A DNA stretch of 63,624 bases, filler included, from Octopus bimaculoides (GCF_001194135.2; 8 parts of 8 records of this genome joined end to end with filler, not necessarily neighbours in it), one strand, 5' to 3'. Shown: positions 41,851 to 57,125, counted from the first letter of the whole stretch. The notes: generated by a model from the sequence alone, not told the origin. Numbers and translations are program-made.

Positions 41851-41881
<31 letters not shown>

Positions 41882-42165: not shown

Positions 42166-42799
42166 ATACATGTCTATACATGATGGGTGTGTGCGTGCGT
42201 GTTTGGTTATGTACGTGTGTGTGTGTGTGCGTGCGTATGTGTGTGTGCTTGTGTACGTTTATATATATGTACATATGTATATACATACACATATACGTAT
42301 ATAGACAATTTACATTATTATTTACTTACATCCCTGAGATGATACTGAAGTCTCAGACAAATCTGCCCTTTTAATCCAGTAGTGACGTCCTATAGACGTC
42401 ATAAAACATATACTATTAAAGCAAATCAGGATAATCAGCAGAAGAATCAACAAACTTATAACTACAACGTACTCCACGTTATCTACAATACAAGATAAGC
42501 AAATATAAATTTCATTAAAATATTATGCATGCATTTCAATATCATTATACATTTCACACGATGCAAGCCAAGGTTGGGAACGCTTTAGGAAATCTACCTC
42601 ATACAAAACAGTATTCCTATCGCTCTCGAATCACAAGCTACTGTACTGAACAACGGAAGACTCAATGGATAATGTACTCCTGTTCATATTCCATTGATTG
42701 TAGGTTTGCTCCGATTAGAACTGATATGAGAGGGGAGGTAAGCATGATAATAATAATTATTAGTTTCAATATATTAACATCGAACCATCATTATCATTA

Positions 42800-43860: not shown

Positions 43861-44219
43861 TATGCAATTGGAAATATACAATACTTTGAATTCTATTATC
43901 AATTAAAAATACTTTCAAAATATATATTACTTACCACCCAGTGCACCCGTTGTAGCTACAAAAGACAGAAGGGAGTGATATTAACAATCCACTCTTCATA
44001 TAGTTTCATGAAATCGTAAGCAAAATTATTACAGTAACGTTTTTTTTTTTAAATAAGGAATATTTAACAAACAATCACAGTTGAAAATATATATGAGATA
44101 GATACAAATAAAAATATAAACAAAATGATGGGATTTAAGAAAATTTTGATAATCATTCAACGTGTTATTTAAGTTCATTTATCGAAAATATAAAGATACA
44201 AACACACGCACACGCGTGC

Positions 44220-45045
44220 CCTGTGTTTGAGTTGCGTAGGCCTAGTTCTCATCCAGAGACTGCTTGTACACAAATCCAGAGGCAGAGAAGGTGGGTTAAG
44301 GAGGTAAACCGAACGATAATTGAATGCTGGATTAAGAGGGAACTCAGAAGAAGGGGATTCCGCCAACGAATGAAAACAAAATGGAATGGGATAGGACTCT
44401 TCGAAACAAGTGAGCAACGGTTAGTCGACCAGGCAAGAGCAATAAGAGCAAAAGGGTGGTTAACAGACAAAGAAATAGGGGAGATAAAAAGGAAAGTAAA
44501 AGATAGAAATAATACTTCAACAGATACCGTTCCCAGTGAGAACAGAAAAATGAAAGGCGGCAGTGAAGACAGAGCAAATTGTAAATGTAAATACACTCTC
44601 AGCAAATGAACCTGAAGTAATAGGAAGTGTTCTATCACAAGAATACGATGATGACCAGCAAGAAATAGTGAGGATGCTGTGCCGATGTATTAGAGAAGAC
44701 CAGGATCAAGCACCCACCTCTGCAACCTGAGGTACATTGATCGATACAAGCTCAAAGTTGAAACCGAAAAGATAGATCCGGCTTTTGGGCTATTCCAGGC
44801 GAGAAATATAACTGAAACTAACAAGATTATTTGGGCTGCAGCTACGGTTGCTGCAGATAGAGTTGAATACAAAAGGAGAGAACAAACAGAACATAAAGAA
44901 CCATACTGGCGTAGACGAATTTGTGAGAAACAAAGTTAAAAAAACATTAAGGACAAGTTGATAGATTGAGAAGAGGCGAACTGCATAATGAAAACAGAAA
45001 AATAATGCTGGAAAGAACATGTAGAATAAGATGTAGAGATTGAAT
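44220..45045 (+). mobile_element. R4/Dong-like LINE, N-terminal ORF fragment
   Basis: [15 protein letters not shown]...[11 protein letters not shown]...[28 protein letters not shown], later EPYWRRRI and RGELHNENRKIMLER, typical of R4/Dong ORF N-termini. Confidence 0.75.
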
Positions 45046-45338: not shown

Positions 45339-45641
45339 GCTCAGGTGTTGCTACTTTAAATACTTTTCTTCTCTTTAAGTAACTGTCACAATAGATTTCC
45401 ATTTTAGATACCCGATGGGAAATCCTGAGGAGTAAAGTTGAACTCTCCGGGTTACATGTTATATTGATTGCATAAAATTTTAACTGATTGGTAGCATATG
45501 ATCCGGTACAGTTGGCTGTAAAGTTGTCTCCTTTCCACTCAAAAAGTGAGTCTCCCTTGTCTAAAGGGCACATGAACTTTGCTGTTCTATCTCCTTGAAT
45601 ATATATAGTACCAACCTCACTAGTAGTTAATTTTCTTGTGT
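45339..45641 (-). CDS. Exon 4 of Ig-like protein gene (domain 3), phase 1-1, 303 nt
   Basis: Acceptor tttcttttaattacag|ac, donor gagc|gtaagt. Reads (D)TRKLTTSEVGTIYIQGDRTAKFMCPLDKGDSLFEWKGDNFTANCTGSYATNQLKFYAINITCNPESSTLLLRISHRVSKMEIYCDSYLKRRKVFKVATPE; N-glyc sequons NFT, NCT, NIT. Confidence 0.8.
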
Positions 45642-45944
45642 CTGTAATTAAAAGAAATTCATGTAAAAGGAGGACAGGTTGTTCTGGAACTTGAAAGCAA
45701 ATGATGTCAATCACTCCATTTCCTGGTTTCTCTTTACTTTATGACACAGGTGATAGTAGATGTAGCTTATAATCTTCAAAGGTGTTCGAAATTTTAGGTG
45801 CAAATTAGGTCTAATTAATCTACATAATGAGCTAATAATCAGATGAAGGCATCAGACCAACCGAAATTTATTAAAATACAGTTTATCCAACACAACTTTC
45901 TATCTCTTTTCTATATAAATATTTACACACATTGTTGTTTTTCG

Positions 45945-46500
45945 GGATGGTCATGCACTACCCGAAATTCATCGGCGTGTTTTCCAACATGTCCATTGAA
46001 GTCCCCTGTCATGATGAGAATATCACCGTCTTTCATCGTCGAGTAATACTCAGAAGGGATTCGTAGAGGTGATCCTTCTGGGTATCTGCGAGGCCAGCGT
46101 GCAGAGCATATGCAGAGATAAATGACACAGTTACCTCAGACAAGGCTATTCTTAGCTTAATTATCCTATCACATACCCTGACTACCTTAATCATTTTATC
46201 CATCCATTTCTTTGCTAGTAGAATACCTACGCTACTTAGGCATTCATTGTTGCCAAGCCAGAAAACCTTGCATCTTCGCCCTTTGCCCATAAGCAGTCTA
46301 GTTGAGGCTCCCCTCCATCGTGTCTCTTAGACACAACATTCATTTACATTCTCCGCTCAAGCATCTCAGATATCTCTACAGACATACCTTTCATACTTCC
46401 AACATTGACTGTGACAGCTCTGAGCTTGTAGAACTGGGAAGAAACATTGGAGGAATGCTTTAAGCTTCTGGAAAGAAAAATATATTTGGAGCCGCATACC
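45945..46500 (-). mobile_element. RTE-clade LINE apurinic endonuclease fragment, in intron 3 of the Ig gene
   Basis: TVNVGSMKG..VEISEMLERR.V..CCV*ETRWRG...KVFWLGN...VGILLAKKW..RVCDRIIKLRI...ISAYA...GDFNGHVG. Confidence 0.85.
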
Positions 46501-46739
46501 TAGAGACCCTTGAGCTTAGAGAAATAATGTTACAATTTCAGTTTCAATTTCCCTTATACCCATGTTTGAATTTTTGTATGTATATATGTATGGATGTATA
46601 CATACATGCATGCATGCATGTATGTATGTATGTATGTATGTATGCATGCATGTATATAAAGGAAAGAGAGAGAGCAGTGAAAGGTAATGAGAGGGGAACA
46701 AAAGTACGGCTATCGGAAATAATTTCAATAAGTACATAC

Positions 46740-47054
46740 CTCTTGTTCGAATGCTATATTCACTTCCATGAAAACTAGTTATGCATATAATACTAAAGTT
46801 GCCATCTGCAAGAAGGATAGGAACAAACGATAAAACAGACATCTTTTTCGAGTAATCGCAACTAAAATGTGCACGGCCTGAAAAACGAGAGCTGTTGCCA
46901 CCAACTGCATGACAATCTTTATACTTCATTAAGAGTTCTCCATCTTCGTGAAACCAGACCACATGACGACTGGCACCAATTTTACAATTCAAAGTGAATT
47001 TTTTTTGCATTCTAGGTTTTGTTCCACCAGCTGGTTCTAGGTTACCTGAATCAT
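46740..47054 (-). CDS. Exon 3 of Ig-like protein gene (domain 2, V-set-like), phase 1-1, 315 nt
   Basis: Acceptor tgtatattcgcag|at, donor agag|gtatgt. Reads (N)DSGNLEPAGGTKPRMQKKFTLNCKIGASRHVVWFHEDGELLMKYKDCHAVGGNSSRFSGRAHFSCDYSKKMSVLSFVPILLADGNFSIICITSFHGSEYSIRTR; RFSGR and S.L...D motifs are V-set-like. Confidence 0.85.
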
Positions 47055-47204
47055 CTGCGAATATACAATGAATATACAATATGAATTCAAGCTCCTTAAT
47101 GTATCATTCTACAAAACATAAAAAATATAGAGTTCAACAGAAGACAAAACGATAAGGAGTTTATAAAGTCATATATGACAGAGAAATAATTTCATGTAAT
47201 TTCA

Positions 47205-47595
47205 TTGTTGCTGTTGGCACTCCGTCGGTTACGACGACGAGGGTTCCTGTTGATCCGATCAACGGAACAGCCCGCTCGTGAAATTAACGTGCAAGTGGCT
47301 GAGCACTCCACAGACACGTGTACCCTTAACGAATTTGTCGGGGAGATTCAGCGTGACACAGAGTGTGACAAGGCTGGCCCTTTGAAATACAGGTACAACA
47401 GAAACAGAAAGAAAGAGTGAGAGAAAGCTGTGGTGAAGGAGTACAGCAGGGTTTGCCACCACCCCCTGCCGGAGCCTCGTGGAACTTTGGGTGCTTTCGC
47501 TCAATAAACACTCACAACGCCCGGTCTGGGAAGCGAAACCGTGATCCTATGACGGCGAGTCCGCTGCCCTAACCACTGGGCCATTGCGCCTCCAC
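47205..47595 (-). mobile_element. Full-length tRNA-derived SINE (head type A, tail type Y; OR1/OR2-like), in intron 2
   Basis: Minus strand GGAGGCGCAATGGCCCAGTGGTTAGG...GGTTTCGCTTCCC...ttgagcgaaagcacc...aaagggccagcc...gtaaccgacggagtgc(caa)n. The family name is from memory. Confidence 0.85.
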
Positions 47596-48062
47596 ATACA
47601 TACATTAGCAACAATCTGCCAAATAGGTTTGCGTTCGAACGAAGAATGAAGGTGTGCTATTGTTTCTTTCCCTCAAATTGACCAATAAATTACATTTTCT
47701 ATTTTTAATTGCTATTACTTCATAAGTAGTTCATATTCTTGTTAGCTTACTGGATATGATGTGAACAGAGGAAACAATTGAAGCAGTAAATACGAATTAT
47801 GAAACTAAGCGAGGATTTTTAAGTGAATCCAGAATATTCAAATTTTAACAAACGTTTCGTTAATTTACAGAATATTCAACACTTCATTACATTTGATCTG
47901 TTTCAATGATGTCAATTAGCAGAGCAGTGTTTCGCTGACATTCTCAAGCAATAGCACATTGCTTCCCGGAAATTATGTTACCACTGATAACTTATAACCC
48001 TTTACGTTCAAATTACTCGTCACCTGTGACATTTCTTGTTTATAAATGAAGTGTGCACTTAC

Positions 48063-48362
48063 TGAAGAGTGGCATAAGTGTCAATCTGATATTAAGACAT
48101 GCATTAGTGTGACAAATGAAAGAAAGTGGTTTGATTTTGAGGAGTGTCACTTTCATTGAAGCAGTATTGCTTGTGCAGTTAATATCTTCGATCTTGTATC
48201 CATCGAGGTCGACTGGGTGGACCGATTCACAAGTAGCTATCGGACCTTTTTCAACCCATTGCTCCAAGAAATCGCCTTCATGAAAAGTGCACATGACATG
48301 TACATTGCCATTCACATGGGAAAAATAAGTCCTGCCCGGAGAAGTAAACAAATAGGACTTCT
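48063..48362 (-). CDS. Exon 2 of Ig-like protein gene (domain 1), phase 1-1, 300 nt
   Basis: Acceptor ctttttatttctttttcag|ag, donor ttca|gtaagt. Reads KSYLFTSPGRTYFSHVNGNVHVMCTFHEGDFLEQWVEKGPIATCESVHPVDLDGYKIEDINCTSNTASMKVTLLKIKPLSFICHTNACLNIRLTLMPLF. Confidence 0.8.
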
Positions 48363-49299
48363 CTGAAAAAGAAATAAAAAGAACATAACCAAACTAACCA
48401 TAACAGAAAGAAGGAGTATAGTTTACACAAACACAAAGGTAATATTTGCCAAGCTTTCCCTCTAGTCTTAGCATAAATAAAATGAATAGTCCTCAACTGA
48501 GATTCGAAACGAGATCGCCAATTTGCCAAATGTTTCTAGTTTATAATGAATCAATACCAATAAGTGATTGGAATGTATTCAATGGGTCTCGTGCAATGAA
48601 ATAATAAGACCAACTCCAGAATATAAAGTCAATCTATATATTAATACGCTGAGGCCGAAATGCGTTACGCTGTCGCGTGATTAGTTGAAGGGAAAGACAG
48701 AGAGCGATAGAGAGAGACAGAGAGAGAACGAGAAAGAGAGAGAGACAGAAAAAGAATGAAAGGGAAGAGTGATTAAGAAAAGAAGGAGAGAGAAAAAAGG
48801 AGAGAAAGAGAGAAGTGTCAACGACGTGAGGTAAGGGAAACGTAATGTTTATTACGTGGTTAAAAAGTTAGTTGAAGTGAGTGGCATAGAGAAAAAGAGT
48901 TAGAAATGCATTGTTTAGCAGAGGAATGATTTTCTTGAGGTGCGGTTAAAAAAAGACAAATAGAGAGAGAGAGAGAGAGATGAGGAGAGCCAGCCAATTA
49001 TTAAACTGTTATGTGTTTAGTGGAAGTGAGNNNNNNNNNNNNNNNNNNNNNNNNNNNNNNNNNNNNNNNNNNNNNNNNNNNNNNNNNNNNNNNNNNNNNN
49101 NNNNNNNNNNNNNNNNNNNNNNNNNNNNNNNNNNNNNNNNNNNNNNNNNNNNNNNNNNNNNNNNNNNNNNNNNNNNNNNNNNNNNNNNNNNNNNNNNNNN
49201 NNNNNNNNNNNNNNNNNNNNNNNNNNNNNNNNNNNNNNNNNNNNNNNNNNNNNNNNNNNNNNNNNNNNNNNNNNNNNNNNNNNNNNNNNNNNNNNNNNN

Positions 49300-49373
<74 letters not shown>

Positions 49374-49452
49374 CCATAAGAGCATCACAGCAAACCACAG
49401 CAGCACATACCTAAGGCACACAGAGCTGCGCTCGGTAGTGAAGTGAAAGCAC
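49374..49452 (+). mobile_element. Short repeat directly after (AAT)n, possibly an R4/Dong 3' UTR fragment
   Basis: ccataagagcatcacagcaaaccacagcagcacatacctaaggcacacagagctgcgctcggtagtgaagtgaaagcac. The assignment rests on recollection of octopus repeats, not on anything in this window. Confidence 0.35.
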
Positions 49453-50041
49453 ATGATTTCTCTTGATATAAAAGATGGGCTGCACCAGATATTCTGCTCA
49501 ATATCAGAGATTTGTTTGTAAGTTATTCGACCATAACCAGTTGAGCATATGTACATCTCTGATCGCGAGCAGTAGTGAAAGGGCATCATAGCCACATATT
49601 GAGAATAATTCTGTGGAGTTTGAATAATTCACCTCTAGAACTTCCCATATCCTACGTAAAATACTGTCTATGTAATCTCAAATTTTAAAACAAACATAAA
49701 TTTCTTATGGTTTCTTAAACATTCTCTTGAACAACACTATGTACAAAACCAAATATATGGCACCCTAGGCATAACATCAGTATGAACTTCTAACTTGTTG
49801 TCTCTTGAAGTCTCTGGGTGAGACTTGGATCCAACTTGTACAAATGCAAAGCAAGAGATTTCAAATTGGATCAAGCCTCAACCTCCTTGAGCTTTCAGTA
49901 GATAAAGATGATGTCTCTGCCTTTGGGTGGTGCGCCTTATTGCAAGCCAGCAGCTTACAGTGTTTTGAACTGTCTTCCTTCTTTCTTTTTTCTTTTCTTT
50001 GTCTTTCTGCTCTTCTGTGTCTTCCTTCGAACTGTCTTTTT

Positions 50042-50223
50042 TTTTTTTACTTTGTTTGGACTTCTGTTGTTTGTTTTTTGAATTGTTTCCTGAACTTTTT
50101 CTTCAAAGCATGGCAAAGAAATTGAACACTGCGTTGGAGTGGGAAATTATCCCACCGAAGCAAAGGCTAAATTTTTTAGCAATTCAAAAAACAAACAACA
50201 GAAGTCCAAACAAAGTAAAAAAA
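50042..50223. repeat. Perfect 44-bp inverted repeat (50042-50085 / 50180-50223) with a 94-bp spacer
   Basis: tttttttactttgtttggacttctgttgtttgttttttgaattg and its exact reverse complement. Confidence 0.95.
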
Positions 50224-50229
50224 CGGTGG

Positions 50230-50800
50230 TGTTGAGGACTTATTCTAAGTCACTCGACACCATCGCTGTCTTTCCTAAGACAGATATAGAAAAAGAGTTG
50301 AAAATCAATTAGCTGTTTTTTCCGGAAAGCTTTCAATCCGAGAACCATGGATAATTTTCAGAAATCCCTGGTTTGGCATGCCACTGAGAGGACGTAGTTG
50401 GTCCGAGATAACTTCTACAGGCATGTTTGTGCCGGCAGATTGGTTTGCTCGAGATGGGCTACGGAGATGTCTGTTCAGTGCACGAGCATTGTTGACTTGT
50501 GGAGTAATGTCAAACAGCTGCTGTTATGTGTAGGATGGAACCGGTTATCAACTGAATCTATCTTGAAGACTGTGCCGTCGCCTTCCTCTGGCAGAGAAGA
50601 ACAGTCAGTTTTACTTTATTTGGTGGCTATGACGAAATAGATAATGTGGTGATTACGGCTAAAAGTGCTGAAGACAAACACTTTCCCTTTCTGCCGAAAC
50701 CTTATGCACAAATCTCATTAAGTGCAGAACTAAGCGGAATGAAGTAACGAAGTCATACAAAAGAAGAGGCTTCTCAGTTGTCTCCAGTAAAGTAGGAAAG
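50230..50800 (+). mobile_element. Tx1/L1-clade LINE ORF2 C-terminal fragment, decayed
   Basis: MDNFQKSLVWH...LVRDNFYRH...SVQCTSIVDLWSNVKQLL...RLSTESILKTVPSPS...VLLYLVAMTK*IMW..RLKVL. Confidence 0.7.
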
Positions 50801-51211
50801 GGAAGTAACTCAAAAATTCAGATTGGAAAAATATGGAAATATTTGCTCCTCGACAACCCCATTTCAATGATCAATTTAATTAATCGACTAAATACATTGT
50901 GTCTATAAAAAGATATATTATGTTTTCATTGCCACATCTCTTTCATTTCTCGAGGTAACGCAATTTGCTCGATTTAAAACTTAATTTAATTTTAACGATG
51001 CGAAGGTATGTACCGTTTTTTTATTGAATTCACGCTCGTACATTAAAACAGTGTAAAAGACGACGTTACACTGTTGGAACTATTACATTATAGTTCGACC
51101 AAACTTGATCCTAAACAACAGATAAAAGTAAAGCAACGAAAACATGGCTATTATATTCAGATATAATGATATAAAATTCAAACGTACGGAAGAATAATGA
51201 TTGCTACTTAC

Positions 51212-51263
51212 TGATGAGACGGAATGTAATTATCAACAAGAGCAGCCGATTCATTGAGAGCAT
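51212..51263 (-). CDS. Putative exon 1 (signal peptide) of the Ig-like protein gene
   Basis: ATG at 51263 gives MLSMNRLLLLIITFRLI plus 1 nt, then a perfect donor A|GTAAGT. Phase 1 matches the exon 2 acceptor. It lies in non-repeat sequence; the cleavage site is not textbook. Confidence 0.5.
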
Positions 51264-52140: not shown

Positions 52141-52539
52141 ATGTATGTTTGTATGTTTATATGTATGTATGCATATATGAATGTATGTATGTATGTATGT
52201 ATGCAGATATATCATTGGAGCCATTGGAATAATTTCTACAATGAAGAGTCTGAGACTTAAAATTTCAGGCGTGCGAGCCGAAATTGTAGCTTTAATAATG
52301 TTTTGTATCAATGCTATACTGTACTGCTAACTATGATATTTATAGACATTTAATCGTCCTTGTATGTAATACCTTGTTTCCATACCTTATGAAGAGAAGA
52401 AGAGAGTCCAGTATCTGTATTTCTCGAAAGATTGTGTGTTTTTGCTTTCATCTTTAGACAGAATCACTGTTATAATTTAATTGATTTAAGAAGACAAGTT
52501 TGATCAATGTATATATATATATGTGTGTGCATATGTTTG

Positions 52540-52745
52540 TGTGTCTATGTTTGTCCCCACGACATCGCTTGACAACTGATAGTTATGTGTTTATGTCCTC
52601 GTAACTTAGCTGTTCGGCAAAAGAGACCGATAGAATAAGTACTAGGCTTCCAAAGAATAAGTCCCGGGGTCGATTTGCTCGACGAAAGGCGGTGCTCCAG
52701 CATGGCCGCAGTCAAAATGACTGAAACATGTAAAAGAGAAAGAGA
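52540..52745 (+). mobile_element. OK-like SINE, 3' half
   Basis: catcgcttgacaac...gatagaataagtactaggctt...ggcggtgctccagcatggccgcagtcaaaatgactgaaac. Confidence 0.8.
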
Positions 52746-52978
52746 GAGATACACTGAGTATACAGTAAGGAAGAACCAAATTTTATTGTGTTTGCAACGA
52801 GTAACCTGCATATTAAAAGTTGATTAAATGTGATAAAAGATTATTCCGGATCAAATTCTGTTCTTTGGGTTTGCGAGAAATGAAAGGTAACAGAAAAGGA
52901 TTTTCGCAACTGAAAGCGAAAATGAAGGGAATCTTAACTGGGGGCATAATTCCCCATGATAGGAGGGATGCCCTTTTG

Positions 52979-53016
<38 letters not shown>

Positions 53017-53202
53017 NNNNNNNNNNNNNNNNNNNNNNNNNNNNNNNNNNNNNNNNNNNNNNNNNNNNNNNNNNNNNNNNNNNNNNNNNNNNNNNNNNNN
53101 NNNNNNNNNNNNNNNNNNNNNNNNNNNNNNNNNNNNNNNNNNNNNNNNNNNNNNNNNNNNNNNNNNNNNNNNNNNNNNNNNNCCCTCTCTCTCTCTCTCT
53201 CT

Positions 53203-53246
<44 letters not shown>

Positions 53247-53929
53247 GAGTCTCTTTCTCCTCTCTCTTCTAGGATATATCCAACTCATTGTGTGGTAATA
53301 ACTAGCGCAGTATTAGTAAAATATAGAAATAATAAGACTGACATTTGAAAACAAAACAGCAACAGTGACAACTGCAACATTTCTAGATGTGGCGCCATAT
53401 CAGTTTAATTAGGTTTTGTACTGTGTTTATTCCTATCCGTATTATTGTCTCCATTTTTGTACAGTTTAAAATAAGCAGAAGTGTCTGTGTGTATTGAGTG
53501 ACATTTCAACTTTGTGTCTAAACGTTTGTTAATTAATTAAAGCTGTTTGTTGTAATAAAATAAAGTTCAACTTACCCCAGTCCCTACGGTTAATTTAAAA
53601 TCATATATATCTAGGCATTGTAACAGGATAACAAACAAATTATAGACGCTTTGTTTGGAAAGAAACGTTTATTAAAACCTTTTCTTTTGTGGAGAAATAA
53701 GAGAACATGTTAGCGTGAGCTAGATGTCGTGTTATCACAACTCGTTAGTTACATGTGTCTATTTGGCATTCATTGTGTAACCAACGGAGATAGACACGTT
53801 CATCTCTTCTATATGCCGCATAATTAATACAAAAAATAGATATATAATTATTTTTAAATGGAGACAGACCTTAATAAATTATAATTATCTTAAACTTTTG
53901 TGCATTCTTTTATTCTTTTATTCTTTTAT

Positions 53930-54334
53930 TCTTTTACTAGTTTCAGTCATTTCACTGCGGCCATGCTGCAGTATCGGCTTTAGTCGAACAATTCTACCCC
54001 ACGGTCTCTTTTATCGAACCACTATTTTACGGTTACGTAAACGCACCAACATCGGTTGTCAAGCGATGGTGGGGGACATACGCAGACACACATACATACA
54101 CACACGCACACACGCACACATACACACACACACACATACACACACACACACACATATACACATTCATATAGGACGGGTTTCTTTCAATTTCCCTCTACTA
54201 AATTCACTCACAAATCTTTGGTCGGACCGCGGCTATAGTAGAAGGTATTTGCCCAAGGTACCACGCAATGGGACTGAACTTGGAACAATTTGGTTGGGAA
54301 GCAAGCTTTTTACTACACAGCCACGCCTGCGCCT
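53930..54334 (-). mobile_element. OK-like SINE, full length with tRNA-like head
   Basis: Minus strand ggcgcaggcgtggctgtgtagtaa...aagttcagtccc...ggtaccttgggcaaat..., internal (GT)n, tail gcagcatggccgcagtgaaatgactgaaac. Confidence 0.8.
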
Positions 54335-55009
54335 AAAATAAGCGTTCCCATGCCGGGAATCGAACTGAAAAAAAAAAAGGCCGTGAACGTTTCTAGATAG
54401 AGGGCTTATTAGAAGATATAATTCATCTTAAAAACATCTCAATTTATTTTGAAAATTAATATAATTATAGATTATAGATAATTATAGATATTTTGTATCT
54501 TTAATGCACAGTTAATGCAGACGCGCGCGCACGCGGACGTACTTACACAGACTCAAGCAAACAAACAAACACAATATCTCTCTCTCACACACACACCCAC
54601 AGACACACAGACACAATGTACATATATAGTTTGTAGACAGCGATTAGTGATAATCGAAATTTTGTCTACAGCGACTGATTCAAACACCATTTTTGTTCTG
54701 AATTGCTAACAAGTTATGATAATTATTATATTCAACGCATCTATTCAGTCTCTACTGTAGGTATTATAAGTAATTATTCATAACTGCATACGTGCGTGAA
54801 CACACACACATGAAACACATACACACATACGCACATACAAAAGCATATACACACACACACATATGCATGTACACACATGTGTGTGCTTTCTATATAGGAG
54901 TGTAAGTGTGTCTGCATTTATGCTTGTGTGTGTGTGTCCGTGCGCATGTGTCTGTATGTAATATTGGAAAAAATATGAGTATGTTCTAATTTCATCTCGG
55001 TGTTAAATT

Positions 55010-55775
55010 ACAGCAAGGGTGAGCCTACCGGGAGTTTAGAACTCCTGAGGGCATCGCTCTCAGGGGTTAGGTCCACGCAAGCCCACCTACCATAAGGAGC
55101 GACCATCAGAGGGGATTTGGAAAGTTAACCAGACAAGTCTTCAATAATAATGATCTTAACAACGAAAATTATGGTTTATAATGCTGTTGCCATTTCAACC
55201 TTGCTATGTGGCTGCGAAACCTGGACTCTATATCGTCGCGATATTCAGAAATTAGAACGCTTTCACCAACAACAAATTCCTGGAAAGAGTCAACAGTCAA
55301 AATATCGAATCGCTGATCATGAAGCATTGTCCTTGGTGGTCAGGACATGTAGCAAGAATGGGAGAATCAAGGTTCCAACGACAAGTCTTATTCAATGGGC
55401 TCTCTTCAGGAAAAAAAAGACCCCACAGGATTGCCCTCTTCAAAGACACAAGGAACAACTGAAAACAATACTGAAAACCATTGAAATTGAACCTAAATCA
55501 TTTGAAACACAAGCTGAGACTGTACCAAGTGTCGGTGTTCCATCACCAGCGAAAAAAAAAAACACCTTTGAAGCCTCCAGAAGAGAAAAGGAAGAAATCA
55601 AACAACAGGAGAGAAAGGCTAAAAAATATCAACCTCGTCCTCCACCAACATTGCCAAGCAGTCAATGCCATCGACTCTTTTGTGCAAAAATTGGTCTACA
55701 GAGTCTCATTAACGGCATCACCATAAAAGGAGCCTTCAACAAAGAGAAAAGGAAATACTCAGGGACTAGATAAAG
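55010..55775 (+). mobile_element. RTE-clade LINE remnant with internal deletions
   Basis: LTTKIMVYNAVAISTLLCGCETWTLYRRDIQKLERFHQ...KEQLKTILKTIEIEPKSFETQAE...CHRLFCAKIGLQS. Confidence 0.8.
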
Positions 55776-56599: not shown

Positions 56600-57125
56600 T
56601 GTGCTCCACTGAACTAGGGGGACGTAAACACGCCAAAATCGGTTGTCAAGCGATGGTGGTGGTGGTGGGGACAAAAACAGACACAAATAACACATACAGA
56701 CATATATATATATATATANNNNNNNNNNNNNNNNNNNNNNNNNNNATATATACAAATATATATACGACGGGCTTCTTTCAGTTTCCACCTACCAAATCCT
56801 CTCGCAAGGCTTTGGTCGGCTCGAGGCTATAGTAGAAGACACTTCCCAAGTAGAAGACACTTCCCAAGTAGAAGACACTTCCCAAGTAGAAGACACTTCC
56901 CATGTGGTTGGGAAGCAAGCTTCTCAACACACTTATTTTTTGTAATCCTAGTATTTATTCTATCGGAATCTGTTGCCAAACCGCTAAGTTACGGGGACGT
57001 AAACGCATTACCATCGGTTGTCAAGCGATGGTGGTGAGACAAGCACACAAACACACACACACACACATATACGACAGGCTTCTTTTAGTTTCCGTCTCCC
57101 AAATCCTCTCACAAAGCTTTGGTGA
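56600..57125 (-). mobile_element. Two adjacent OK-like SINE copies (~56600-56925 and ~56940-57125)
   Basis: The block ggggacgtaaac...cggttgtcaagcgatgg...acgacgggcttctttcagtttcc occurs twice. Confidence 0.75.
56831..56902. repeat. Perfect 18-bp tandem repeat x4 (agtagaagacacttccca)
   Basis: Four identical units inside the SINE. Confidence 0.95.

What the first reader, a model, noticed from the sequence alone, without database searches (positions are those of the whole stretch)
45339..51263. Multi-exon gene for a secreted or surface protein with three highly diverged Ig-like domains
Seen: three 300-315-nt open exons, each with strong AG/GT sites in phase 1, splice in frame. An upstream 52-nt ATG exon (MLSMNRLLLLIITFRLI) has a perfect phase-1 GTAAGT donor. 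Together they give ~323 codons with six N-glycosylation sequons. Known: one-domain-per-exon phase 1-1 structure is the hallmark of IgSF receptors. Inference: I cannot match it to Dscam, NCAM, hemolin or other conserved IgSF proteins, so it may belong to a fast-evolving lineage-specific recognition family (immune, adhesion or allorecognition), analogous to gastropod FREP/VIgL IgSF domains. No lectin, fibrinogen, TM or kinase exon was identified in the window.
Basis: partly seen in the sequence, partly recalled or inferred. Interest (0 to 1): 0.8.

Follow-up and report, generated by a model that had tools for sequence, protein, structure and literature searches.

The report
Octopus three-Ig-domain membrane receptor gene
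This is a real, already annotated but unstudied octopus gene for a cell-surface protein with three antibody-like domains; its family is seen only in octopus and cuttlefish-type cephalopods and its protein sequence changes unusually fast, as recognition molecules often do.

Summary
The exons are real. On the minus strand, a 52-nt signal exon and three phase-1 exons of 300, 315 and 303 nt splice in frame. They match NCBI model XP_014780451.1 (Octopus bimaculoides LOC106876422, "uncharacterized"; UniProt "Ig-like domain-containing protein") at 100% identity.

The product is therefore a 381-aa type I membrane protein, not a secreted one. The assembly gap lies inside intron 1 and touches no coding sequence.

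P0001 itself matches no Pfam family. A 16-sequence alignment gave an AlphaFold model with pLDDT 81.5. Foldseek matched it to multi-Ig proteins, with over 1500 hits at E<=0.001. A family profile of domain 2 hit solved V-type Ig domains, best E 3e-5. Domains 1 and 3 are a derived subtype.

Relatives were found only in coleoid cephalopods: a three-gene tandem cluster in Octopus, cuttlefish transcripts, and larger receptors with tyrosine-motif tails.

Against O. sinensis, dN/dS is 1.57. Non-synonymous divergence (13.6%) exceeds intron divergence (8.5%, p=1e-4), yet reading frames, cysteines and splice sites are kept.

Verdict: a fast-evolving, lineage-specific IgSF surface receptor of untested function. 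It is a new member of a known kind.

The parts
51212..51263 (-). Exon 1: ATG plus a hydrophobic N-terminal peptide (MLSMNRLLLLIITFRLI, probable signal peptide), 52 nt, phase-1 GTAAGT donor.
   Evidence: Identical to residues 1-17 of XP_014780451.1. AF2 gives a helix at 3-16 followed by a low-confidence linker at 17-24. No signal-peptide predictor was available.
48363..51211 (-). Intron 1, containing the assembly gap 49031-49299. The gap is flanked by an (ATT)n microsatellite and CT-rich low-complexity sequence. The intron also holds a 44-nt perfect inverted repeat.
   Evidence: The gap is intronic, and the same gap is present in GCA_001194135.2.
48063..48362 (-). Exon 2: Ig-like domain 1 (residues 18-117), phase 1-1. 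Cysteines C42, C62, C80, C101, C106; W53.
   Evidence: AF2 pLDDT about 91 with eight strands. hhalign to domain 3 gives 97.9% and to domain 2 gives 89.5%. PDB profile hits are only weak Ig matches, E 0.2-0.65.
46740..47054 (-). Exon 3: Ig-like domain 2 (residues 118-222), V-type, phase 1-1. Cysteines C141, C165, C183, C208; W151; DGNFSIIC motif.
   Evidence: The family profile hit 141 solved Ig chains (CD226 D2 E 3.3e-5, TCR V-alpha 1.2e-4). AF2 pLDDT is above 90 with nine strands including C''. Splice sites are conserved in O. sinensis.
45339..45641 (-). Exon 4: Ig-like domain 3 (residues 223-323), of the same subtype as domain 1, phase 1-1. Cysteines C247, C267, C285, C307; W258.
   Evidence: AF2 pLDDT about 80. 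Splice sites conserved. dN/dS about 3.1 against O. sinensis.
43935..43955 (-). Exon 5: a 21-nt mini-exon (PTTGALG, stalk), phase 1-1. It may be alternatively spliced, because skipping it stays in frame.
   Evidence: A unique pattern match with AG and GT flanks, 0 expected by chance. It is part of XP_014780451.1. It is open with intact splice sites in O. sinensis, although that species' model skips it.
42330..42482 (-). Exon 6: transmembrane helix (about residues 335-358) plus a cytoplasmic tail of about 20 aa (GRHYWIKRADLSETSVSSQG). The GTAAGT donor follows the first base of the stop codon; read-through ends at 42322.
   Evidence: AF2 helix 332-358. Hydropathy peak 333-351. N353 and C356 are invariant among the three close family members. 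The rest of the stop codon is at L001 21295-21296, outside the piece.

Best explanation
The feature is Octopus bimaculoides gene LOC106876422. It has six coding exons within the piece, and the stop codon is completed just beyond the piece's edge. It encodes a 381-aa N-glycosylated type I membrane protein.

The parts, in order, are a signal peptide, three Ig-like domains each encoded by one phase-1 exon, a short stalk, one transmembrane helix, and a cytoplasmic tail of about 20 residues with no recognisable signalling motif. Domain 2 is a V-type Ig domain. Domains 1 and 3 are a derived subtype. All three carry an extra cysteine pair between the C' region and strand D, in addition to the canonical B-F pair.

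The gene is the last member of a three-gene tandem cluster. The cluster belongs to a family found here only in coleoid cephalopods. Larger members of the family add canonical Ig domains and long tails full of YxN and YxxM motifs.

Inferred mechanism: the protein displays a rapidly diversifying ectodomain at the cell surface and binds a fast-changing partner. That partner could be a pathogen, or another self or non-self surface molecule. Because the protein cannot signal alone, it would work through an associated partner or as a counter-receptor, possibly for the long-tailed relatives. The conserved juxtamembrane cysteine may be palmitoylated.

Shown here: gene structure, topology, predicted fold, family distribution and evolutionary rate. 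Inferred only: ligand, tissue, and whether the role is immune or something else.
For: Gene model. The match to XP_014780451.1 / A0A0L8GJQ3 is 100%. Splice sites are conserved in O. sinensis. The 35%-identical paralogue has the same exon plan.

Fold. AF2 with a 16-sequence alignment gave pLDDT 81.5, three all-beta domains and a TM helix. Foldseek returned 1524 PDB matches at E<=0.001, and the top ones are all multi-Ig proteins. The domain-2 profile hit solved V-type Ig domains. hhalign links d1 to d3 at E 6e-13 and d1 to d2 at E 2e-6, with all four cysteines aligned.

Family. The deep HMM search returned Octopus and cuttlefish-type relatives, with no other molluscs. Relatives recovered as 1.4-1.6 kb intronless transcript contigs show that the family is expressed.

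Selection.
- dN 0.149, dS 0.095, omega 1.57.
- Exon divergence 13.2% against intron divergence 8.5%, p=6e-5.
- Non-synonymous sites against intron, p=1e-4. Synonymous sites against intron, p=0.89.
- One in-frame indel in the exons against 27 gap openings in the introns.
- Neutral simulation: P(no stop codon)=0.026, P(all 13 Cys/Trp kept)=0.011.
- The neighbouring paralogue pair is equally divergent, at 71% identity.

Tail. P0001 has no ITIM, ITAM, YxN or YxxM motif, while the long relatives carry 3-10 of each.
Against: - No transcript evidence for this gene was available. The exact-sequence look-up found only the genome contig, and no transcript-derived near-identical protein appeared in the protein searches.
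- P0001 itself reaches no Pfam Ig threshold. Its relatives are sub-threshold on the homologous domains.
- The first AF2 run, with 3 sequences, failed at pLDDT 34. The good model therefore depends on a shallow 16-row alignment.
- The direct dN-versus-dS contrast is not significant on its own (p=0.11). It rests on one species pair and about 760 nt.
- Nothing here shows a ligand, a tissue or an immune role.
- Continuity between exon 1 and exon 2 across the gap rests on scaffolding only.
Confidence: 0.65

Rival explanations
1. The gene is a neutrally drifting, functionless or decaying model. On this reading, omega near or above 1 simply reflects loss of constraint.
For: Overall omega is 1.57 and is not significantly different from 1 against synonymous sites. 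Domain 2 has omega 1.02. No transcript of this gene was recovered. No curated Pfam domain is reached.
Against: Reading frames are intact in O. bimaculoides and O. sinensis, and in the partial O. vulgaris model. All 13 Cys/Trp are kept, and splice sites are kept. The only exon indel is in frame, against 27 gap openings in the introns. In neutral simulation P(no stop)=0.026 and P(Cys/Trp kept)=0.011. Non-synonymous divergence exceeds intron divergence (p=1e-4), which neutrality does not predict. Structural residues are conserved across paralogues at 35% identity and across cuttlefish relatives.
Confidence: 0.07
2. The protein is a homophilic or heterophilic neural or epithelial adhesion molecule of the three-Ig type, working like nectin/Necl or IgLON proteins, with no role in immunity.
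For: The top Foldseek hits include OPCML, IgLON5, NEGR1 and Necl-4, which are all three-Ig adhesion molecules, and PTP-delta Ig1-3. The best sequence-level PDB match of domain 2 is CD226 domain 2; CD226 is known to bind nectin-like ligands. The extra cysteine pair is aligned in that match.
Against: These matches are generic Ig similarity at 9-16% identity. There is no orthology. IgLONs are GPI-anchored and slowly evolving. Here the anchor is a TM helix, and the ectodomain evolves faster than the introns. Wiring molecules are, from general knowledge, usually under strong purifying selection.
Confidence: 0.13
3. The protein is a reproductive (gamete or mating) recognition protein, whose rapid evolution reflects sexual conflict rather than pathogens.
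For: It shows the same signature as many gamete-recognition proteins: omega above 1, lineage restriction and tandem paralogues.
Against: No expression data were available. The family includes large receptors with many SH2-docking tyrosine motifs, which fits signalling receptors better than gamete coats. Nothing here discriminates directly.
Confidence: 0.1

Closest known systems
Octopus paralogues and coleoid relatives (O. bimaculoides LOC106876419; O. sinensis LOC118763527 and LOC118763565; Acanthosepion pharaonis CAE1176312.1; the long forms LOC106874545, LOC115212114 and LOC115212116), all annotated 'uncharacterized'
   Same: True homologues, with E from 1e-205 to 1e-5. They share the d1-d2 module, the conserved inter-domain linker P-[LM]-[YF]-N-x-x-G-N-L, the four-cysteine pattern and a juxtamembrane cysteine. 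The short forms share the whole architecture and exon plan.
   Different: Identity is 35% or less outside the orthologues. In the cuttlefish and long forms the third domain is a canonical C2-set Ig domain rather than a d1-type copy. The long forms add 3-8 Pfam-recognised Ig domains and tails of 290-430 aa with repeated YxN and YxxM motifs.
Vertebrate nectin/Necl (CADM) and CD226/PVR-type IgSF receptors
   Same: Type I membrane proteins with two or three Ig domains and a V-type ligand-binding domain. CD226 D2 is the best solved sequence match to domain 2, and a C'-D cysteine pair aligns there. Necl-4 is among the top fold matches.
   Different: The per-domain match is weak (i-Evalue 0.09) and there is no orthology. 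Domains 1 and 3 are a derived subtype. The cytoplasmic tail has no recognisable motif.
IgLON family (OPCML, NEGR1, IgLON5)
   Same: Three tandem Ig domains, and among the top Foldseek matches across all three domains.
   Different: From general knowledge, IgLONs are GPI-anchored, conserved neural adhesion molecules. This protein has a TM helix and a tail, and it evolves with omega of at least 1.
Gastropod FREPs and VIgL domains
   Same: Molluscan, lineage-specific, diversified IgSF domains that are hard to match to canonical Ig profiles.
   Different: From general knowledge, FREPs are secreted lectins with a C-terminal fibrinogen domain. No fibrinogen domain is present here, and the C-terminus is a membrane anchor. 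The deep search detected no sequence relationship.
Clustered, fast-evolving immune-type IgSF receptor families with short-tail and long-tail members (vertebrate KIR/LILR/SIRP, teleost NITRs)
   Same: Tandem clusters, rapid ectodomain evolution, and coexistence of short-tailed forms with tyrosine-motif long-tailed forms.
   Different: The short and long ectodomains are only about 24% identical, not near-identical pairs. There is no charged TM residue. The long tails carry YxN and YxxM motifs, with only occasional ITIM-pattern matches and no ITAM. The resemblance is analogy only.

Membership tests
Immunoglobulin superfamily (Ig-like domain) | A beta-sandwich of about 100 residues with Ig strand topology | tested here: met
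   AF2 model with pLDDT 81.5 shows 8-9 strands per domain. Foldseek gave probability 1.0 to multi-Ig proteins, with 1524 hits at E<=0.001. This is a predicted structure, not a solved one.
Immunoglobulin superfamily (Ig-like domain) | B-strand and F-strand cysteine pair, with a Trp about 10 residues after the first Cys | tested here: met
   C42/W53/C101, C141/W151/C208 and C247/W258/C307. These positions are conserved across the family, except that the B-strand Cys of domain 1 is lost in the P0004 paralogue.
Immunoglobulin superfamily (Ig-like domain) | Match to a curated Ig profile at its gathering threshold | tested here: not met
   P0001 matched 0 Pfam families at E<=10. The orthologue and paralogue are sub-threshold: Ig_3 25.6 and 14.4 bits against a cut-off of 30, and C2-set_2 14.4 against 21.
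Immunoglobulin superfamily (Ig-like domain) | Significant profile similarity to solved Ig domains | tested here: met
   Met for domain 2, which hit 141 PDB Ig chains with best E 3.3e-5. Domains 1 and 3 are linked only transitively, through hhalign. Their direct PDB hits are not significant.
Immunoglobulin superfamily (Ig-like domain) | One domain per exon with phase 1-1 boundaries | tested here: met
   Exons of 300, 315 and 303 nt, all phase 1. The same plan is seen in the paralogues.
Type I single-pass membrane receptor | N-terminal signal peptide | tested here: inconclusive
   A hydrophobic stretch LLLLIITF follows M-L-S-M-N-R, and AF2 gives a helix at 3-16. No signal-peptide predictor was available, and the cleavage site is atypical.
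Type I single-pass membrane receptor | A single C-terminal TM helix followed by a positively charged cytoplasmic flank | tested here: met
   Hydropathy peak at 333-351 with score 3.1. AF2 helix at 332-358. The helix is followed by GRHYWIKR.
Gastropod FREP | C-terminal fibrinogen-related domain; secreted | tested here: not met
   No fibrinogen hit in Pfam. The C-terminus is a TM anchor.
IgLON | GPI anchor and conserved orthologues across bilaterians | tested here: not met
   The protein has a TM helix plus a tail. Relatives are found only in cephalopods.
ITIM/ITAM immune receptors or adaptor-paired activating receptors | An ITIM or ITAM in the tail, or a charged residue in the TM helix | tested here: not met
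   The motif scan of the P0001 tail found none. The TM helix has only polar N353. The long-tailed relatives have mostly YxN and YxxM motifs.

The most novel reading that the evidence does not exclude
The gene is one arm of a coleoid-cephalopod-specific immune-type or allorecognition receptor system. In this system, short-tailed members under positive selection (this three-gene cluster) act with or against long-tailed relatives that carry up to about 20 SH2-docking tyrosine motifs. It would be an independently evolved counterpart of vertebrate clustered paired Ig receptors, built on a new four-cysteine Ig-domain subtype.
Probability: 0.2. Interest if true: 0.7.

Novelty: new member of a known kind. 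Interest (0 to 1): 0.4.

Why it matters
Few receptor families specific to cephalopod immunity or cell-surface recognition have been characterised. This locus gives a concrete candidate, with several features that can be followed up:
- a coleoid-restricted Ig-superfamily family with an unusual four-cysteine domain module;
- a tandem cluster whose ectodomain changes faster than the neighbouring introns while its structural residues are kept;
- larger relatives whose tails are arrays of SH2-docking motifs.

That makes it testable whether cephalopods evolved their own diversified Ig-type receptors. The finding is not surprising in kind. It is an IgSF membrane protein, and the gene model is already in NCBI and UniProt as an uncharacterised protein.

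Tried and rejected
- Pfam on the spliced protein: no family at E<=10.
- Full-length profile against PDB sequences: nothing. Only per-domain profiles worked.
- AF2 with a 3-sequence alignment: pLDDT 34, unusable.
It added only one cuttlefish-type sequence.
- Filling the gap from the chromosome-level assembly: that assembly holds the same contigs and the same N runs.
- Transcript evidence by exact-protein look-up: only the genome contig was found.
- Paralogue exons elsewhere in the piece: none. The upstream 6 kb is interspersed repeats.
- A control gene for the divergence rate: the neighbouring AMP-binding gene of O. sinensis is not covered by the O. bimaculoides flank in hand, so introns served as the neutral reference.
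- Literature searches for the gene and accession identifiers and for the SRA runs: no papers. Two topical searches found nothing on this family.
- tRNA scan of the SINE-like intron element: none found.
- Pfam on retroelement-like ORF fragments: nothing significant.
- Rejected: a secreted protein (a TM exon is present), FREP membership (no fibrinogen domain), and a pseudogene (frames, cysteines and splice sites are kept).

Full report
**1. Observation**

| Exon | Coordinates | Length | Sites |
|---|---|---|---|
| 1 | 51263-51212 | 52 nt | ATG start, GTAAGT donor |
| 2 | 48362-48063 | 300 nt | pyrimidine tract + AG, GTAAGT |
| 3 | 47054-46740 | 315 nt | pyrimidine tract + AG, GTATGT |
| 4 | 45641-45339 | 303 nt | pyrimidine tract + AG, GTAAGT |

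All exons are phase 1. Together they make 970 nt, or 323 codons plus 1 nt.

Long open frames are not rare in this piece. It holds 19 stop-free stretches of at least 95 codons, so the proof has to come from elsewhere:
- The spliced product is 100% identical over its full length to XP_014780451.1. That model is Octopus bimaculoides LOC106876422, named "uncharacterized protein" by NCBI and "Ig-like domain-containing protein" (A0A0L8GJQ3) by UniProt.
- The window is therefore O. bimaculoides chromosome CM046605.1 at about 103.55 Mb.

**2.

The NCBI protein is 381 aa, not 323. Its remaining residues map inside the piece:
- A 21-nt phase-1 mini-exon at 43955-43935 encodes PTTGALG. The pattern match is unique, has AG and GT flanks, and none is expected by chance.
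- A 153-nt exon at 42482-42330 encodes DNVEYVVVISLLILLLIILICFNSICFMTSIGRHYWIKRADLSETSVSSQG.

This last exon holds a hydrophobic helix. AF2 places it at 332-358 and the hydropathy peak is at 333-351. A positively charged flank follows it. The product is therefore a type I membrane protein, not a secreted one.

The model's stop codon is split as T|GA. The last two bases lie beyond the N run that ends the piece (L001 21295-21296). Read-through would add only CK before a stop at 42322.

There are seven N-x-S/T sequons. One of them spans the exon 2/3 junction.

**3. The assembly gap**

The gap 49031-49299 sits inside intron 1, between an (ATT)n microsatellite and CT-rich sequence. No exon or reading frame crosses it.

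The chromosome-scale assembly carries the same contigs and the same gaps, so it gives no independent confirmation of continuity.

Indirect support for joining exon 1 to exon 2:
- The phase-1 donor matches the phase-1 acceptor.
- The O. sinensis paralogue, whose locus has no gaps, joins its signal exon directly to the domain-1 exon at the same ...I|KKSY... position.

One caveat remains. Paralogue LOC106876419 has an extra 57-nt exon between its signal and domain-1 exons. A small exon hidden in the gap therefore cannot be excluded.

**4. Are the domains Ig-like?**

Direct tests on the protein failed:
- No Pfam family at E<=10.
- No PDB sequence hit for the full-length profile.
- AF2 with a three-sequence alignment gave pLDDT 34.

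A profile search of 1.84 billion representative proteins found 13 more relatives. With these, three lines of evidence converge.

(a) AF2 on a 16-sequence alignment gave mean pLDDT 81.5. It predicts three all-beta domains, at about 91, 92 and 80 pLDDT, with 8-9 strands each. Foldseek against the PDB returned 1524 matches at E<=0.001. The top matches all align over about 320-360 columns to multi-Ig proteins: PTP-delta Ig1-3, OPCML, IgLON5, NEGR1, NCAM2, Necl-4, contactins, titin and antibody fragments.

(b) A 14-sequence profile of domain 2 hit 141 solved Ig chains. The best were CD226 (3.3e-5), TCR V-alpha (1.2e-4), the PD-L1 C2 domain and VH domains. This fits the nine-strand, V-like prediction.

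(c) hhalign links the domains to each other:

| Pair | Probability | E-value |
|---|---|---|
| d1 - d3 | 97.9% | 5.9e-13 |
| d1 - d2 | 89.5% | 2e-6 |
| d2 - d3 | 46% | 2e-4 |

In the d1-d2 alignment all four cysteines align.

Domains 1 and 3 on their own give only non-significant PDB hits. They are a derived subtype.

Each domain has the canonical B-F cysteine pair and the C-strand Trp. Each also has a second conserved pair, after strand C' and at the end of strand D (C62/C80, C165/C183, C267/C285).

The Ig assignment is well supported, but it rests on prediction and profiles. It does not rest on a curated-threshold match.

**5. Family and genomic context**

Orthologues are O. sinensis LOC118763565 at 72% identity and part of O. 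vulgaris CAI9723261.

Two paralogues share the full architecture of signal peptide, three domains, TM helix and short tail:
- LOC118763527 of O. sinensis, 35% identical.
- LOC106876419 of O. bimaculoides, 28% identical.

Cluster layout:
- In O. sinensis the 35% paralogue lies about 57 kb upstream on the same strand.
- In O. bimaculoides a 396-aa gene lies between our gene and LOC106876419. Its signal exon matches that paralogue. LOC106876419 is about 50 kb from our gene and on the opposite strand.
- This is a conserved three-gene cluster.

More distant members share only the d1-d2 module and its conserved linker. They are O. bimaculoides LOC106874545, LOC128247863 and LOC128247864, O. vulgaris LOC115212114 and O. 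sinensis LOC115212116. They continue with Pfam-recognised Ig_3, I-set and C2-set_2 domains, a TM helix, and tails of 290-430 aa. Those tails carry 3-10 copies each of YxN and YxxM motifs.

Four relatives are 1.3-1.6 kb intronless contigs from sequencing-run assemblies, so they are mRNAs. One of them clusters at over 90% identity with a cuttlefish protein, Acanthosepion pharaonis CAE1176312.1.

The only non-cephalopod hit was a lamprey obscurin-like protein. It matched through nine generic Ig repeats.

As far as HMMER can see, the family is restricted to coleoid cephalopods. The species behind two of the run accessions are unknown.

**6. Evolutionary rate**

Codon alignments of the domain-2, domain-3 and TM exons were made against O. 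sinensis (L003). Nei-Gojobori estimates:

| Region | omega |
|---|---|
| Domain 2 | 1.02 |
| Domain 3 | 3.06 |
| TM and tail | 3.1 |
| All three | 1.57 (dN 0.149, dS 0.095) |

The dN-versus-dS contrast alone is not significant (p=0.11).

The surrounding 5.3 kb aligns almost continuously, so it gives a local neutral reference:
- Introns: 8.5% mismatches (377/4439).
- Exons: 13.2% mismatches (104/789), p=5.7e-5 against introns.
- Non-synonymous sites: 13.6%, p=1e-4 against introns.
- Synonymous sites: equal to introns, p=0.89.

Several features are kept despite this fast change:
- The exons carry one gap opening, and it is in frame. The introns carry 27.
- All AG/GT sites of exons 3-6 are conserved, including the mini-exon that the O. 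sinensis model skips.
- In 20,000 neutral simulations, only 2.6% of sequences kept the frame free of stops, and only 1.1% kept all 13 Cys/Trp.

Amino-acid change that is faster than neutral, on a preserved scaffold, is the signature of diversifying selection rather than decay. The neighbouring paralogue pair, LOC106876419 and its O. vulgaris orthologue, is equally divergent at 71% identity.

Caveats: the estimate uses one species pair, about 760 nt, and counting methods only.

**7. Mechanism**

Shown here:
- A glycosylated three-Ig ectodomain on a single-pass anchor.
- A tail of about 20 residues with no ITIM, ITAM, YxN or YxxM motif.
- A conserved N353 and a juxtamembrane C356.

Inferred:
- The protein is a cell-surface recognition molecule whose binding surface is being driven to change.
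- It signals, if at all, through an associated protein, or it serves as a counter-receptor.
- The long-tailed relatives, with their arrays of SH2-docking motifs, are the obvious candidate partners or signalling counterparts.
- The juxtamembrane cysteine is conserved across the whole family and is a plausible palmitoylation site. This last point rests on general knowledge and was not tested.

I rank an immune or non-self recognition role as most likely. Neural adhesion and reproductive recognition remain open. No expression or binding data were available.

**8. Comparison and novelty**

The gene works like other small clustered IgSF surface receptors: nectin/Necl and CD226-type receptors, IgLONs, and the fast-evolving immune receptor clusters of vertebrates. 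It is a member of none of them. The membership table gives the failed criteria.

The FREP/VIgL comparison is analogy only, because there is no fibrinogen domain and no detectable homology.

The gene model is already public as an uncharacterised protein. No paper mentioning it or its relatives was found.

It is best filed as a new, unstudied member of a known kind. What adds interest is the cephalopod-restricted family, the unusual domain subtype and the selection signal.

Noticed in passing
window 50042-50085 and 50180-50223: A perfect 44-nt inverted repeat with a 94-nt spacer inside intron 1. It could be a MITE-like element or a hairpin.
   Followed up: partly
window 47283-47605 (intron 2); also L001 20629-20903 and several places in L003: A repeat of about 300 nt begins with a tRNA-like sequence (GGCGCAATGGCCCAGTGGTTAGGGC...) and occurs in several copies at 88-91% identity. 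It looks like a tRNA-derived SINE. ARAGORN calls no tRNA there.
   Followed up: partly
window 52507-52746, 53917-54335, 56615-57123: The upstream 6 kb is made of interspersed repeats, each with 3-4 copies in the O. sinensis locus. No other gene or paralogue exon is there.
   Followed up: partly
window 55150-55773 (+), 44223-44609 (+), about 45950-46400 (-): ORF fragments that look retroelement-derived by eye, such as '...CGCETWTL...' and '...MTGDFNGHVG...'. Pfam gave no significant match.
   Followed up: partly
window 49300-49372, around 53017-53182, 41851-41880, about 46600-46680: Both gaps checked (49031-49299, 53017-53182) abut a microsatellite or low-complexity run, which probably caused the assembly breaks. 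These are (ATT)n and CT-rich sequence at 49031-49299 and (GA)n at 53017-53182. The lower end of the piece abuts (TA)n, and intron 3 holds (CATA)n.
   Followed up: no
P0002 (O. vulgaris CAI9723261.1); P0003 (O. sinensis XP_036359034.1); L003 24928-25025: The public models of the orthologues look faulty. The O. vulgaris protein fuses the upstream paralogue's domains to this gene's domains 1-2. The O. sinensis model lacks the signal and domain-1 exons and skips the conserved 21-nt mini-exon.
   Followed up: partly
P0008 (709 aa) and P0012 (1220 aa): The long-tailed relatives have cytoplasmic tails built of tandem repeats of about 30-35 residues, each carrying YxN and YxxM-type tyrosine motifs. 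They look like scaffold-like signalling tails.
   Followed up: partly
P0018 (XP_014777803.1, O. bimaculoides LOC106874545), C-terminal about 230 residues: After the Ig domains the model runs into sequence that does not resemble the TM and tail of its relatives. It looks like a fused unrelated (possibly transposon-derived) ORF, so the gene model is likely chimeric.
   Followed up: no
L006 1514-1576 (-) and 10001 (+): In O. bimaculoides the middle paralogue and LOC106876419 are arranged head to head, with about 8.4 kb between their first coding exons. They may share a regulatory region.
   Followed up: no
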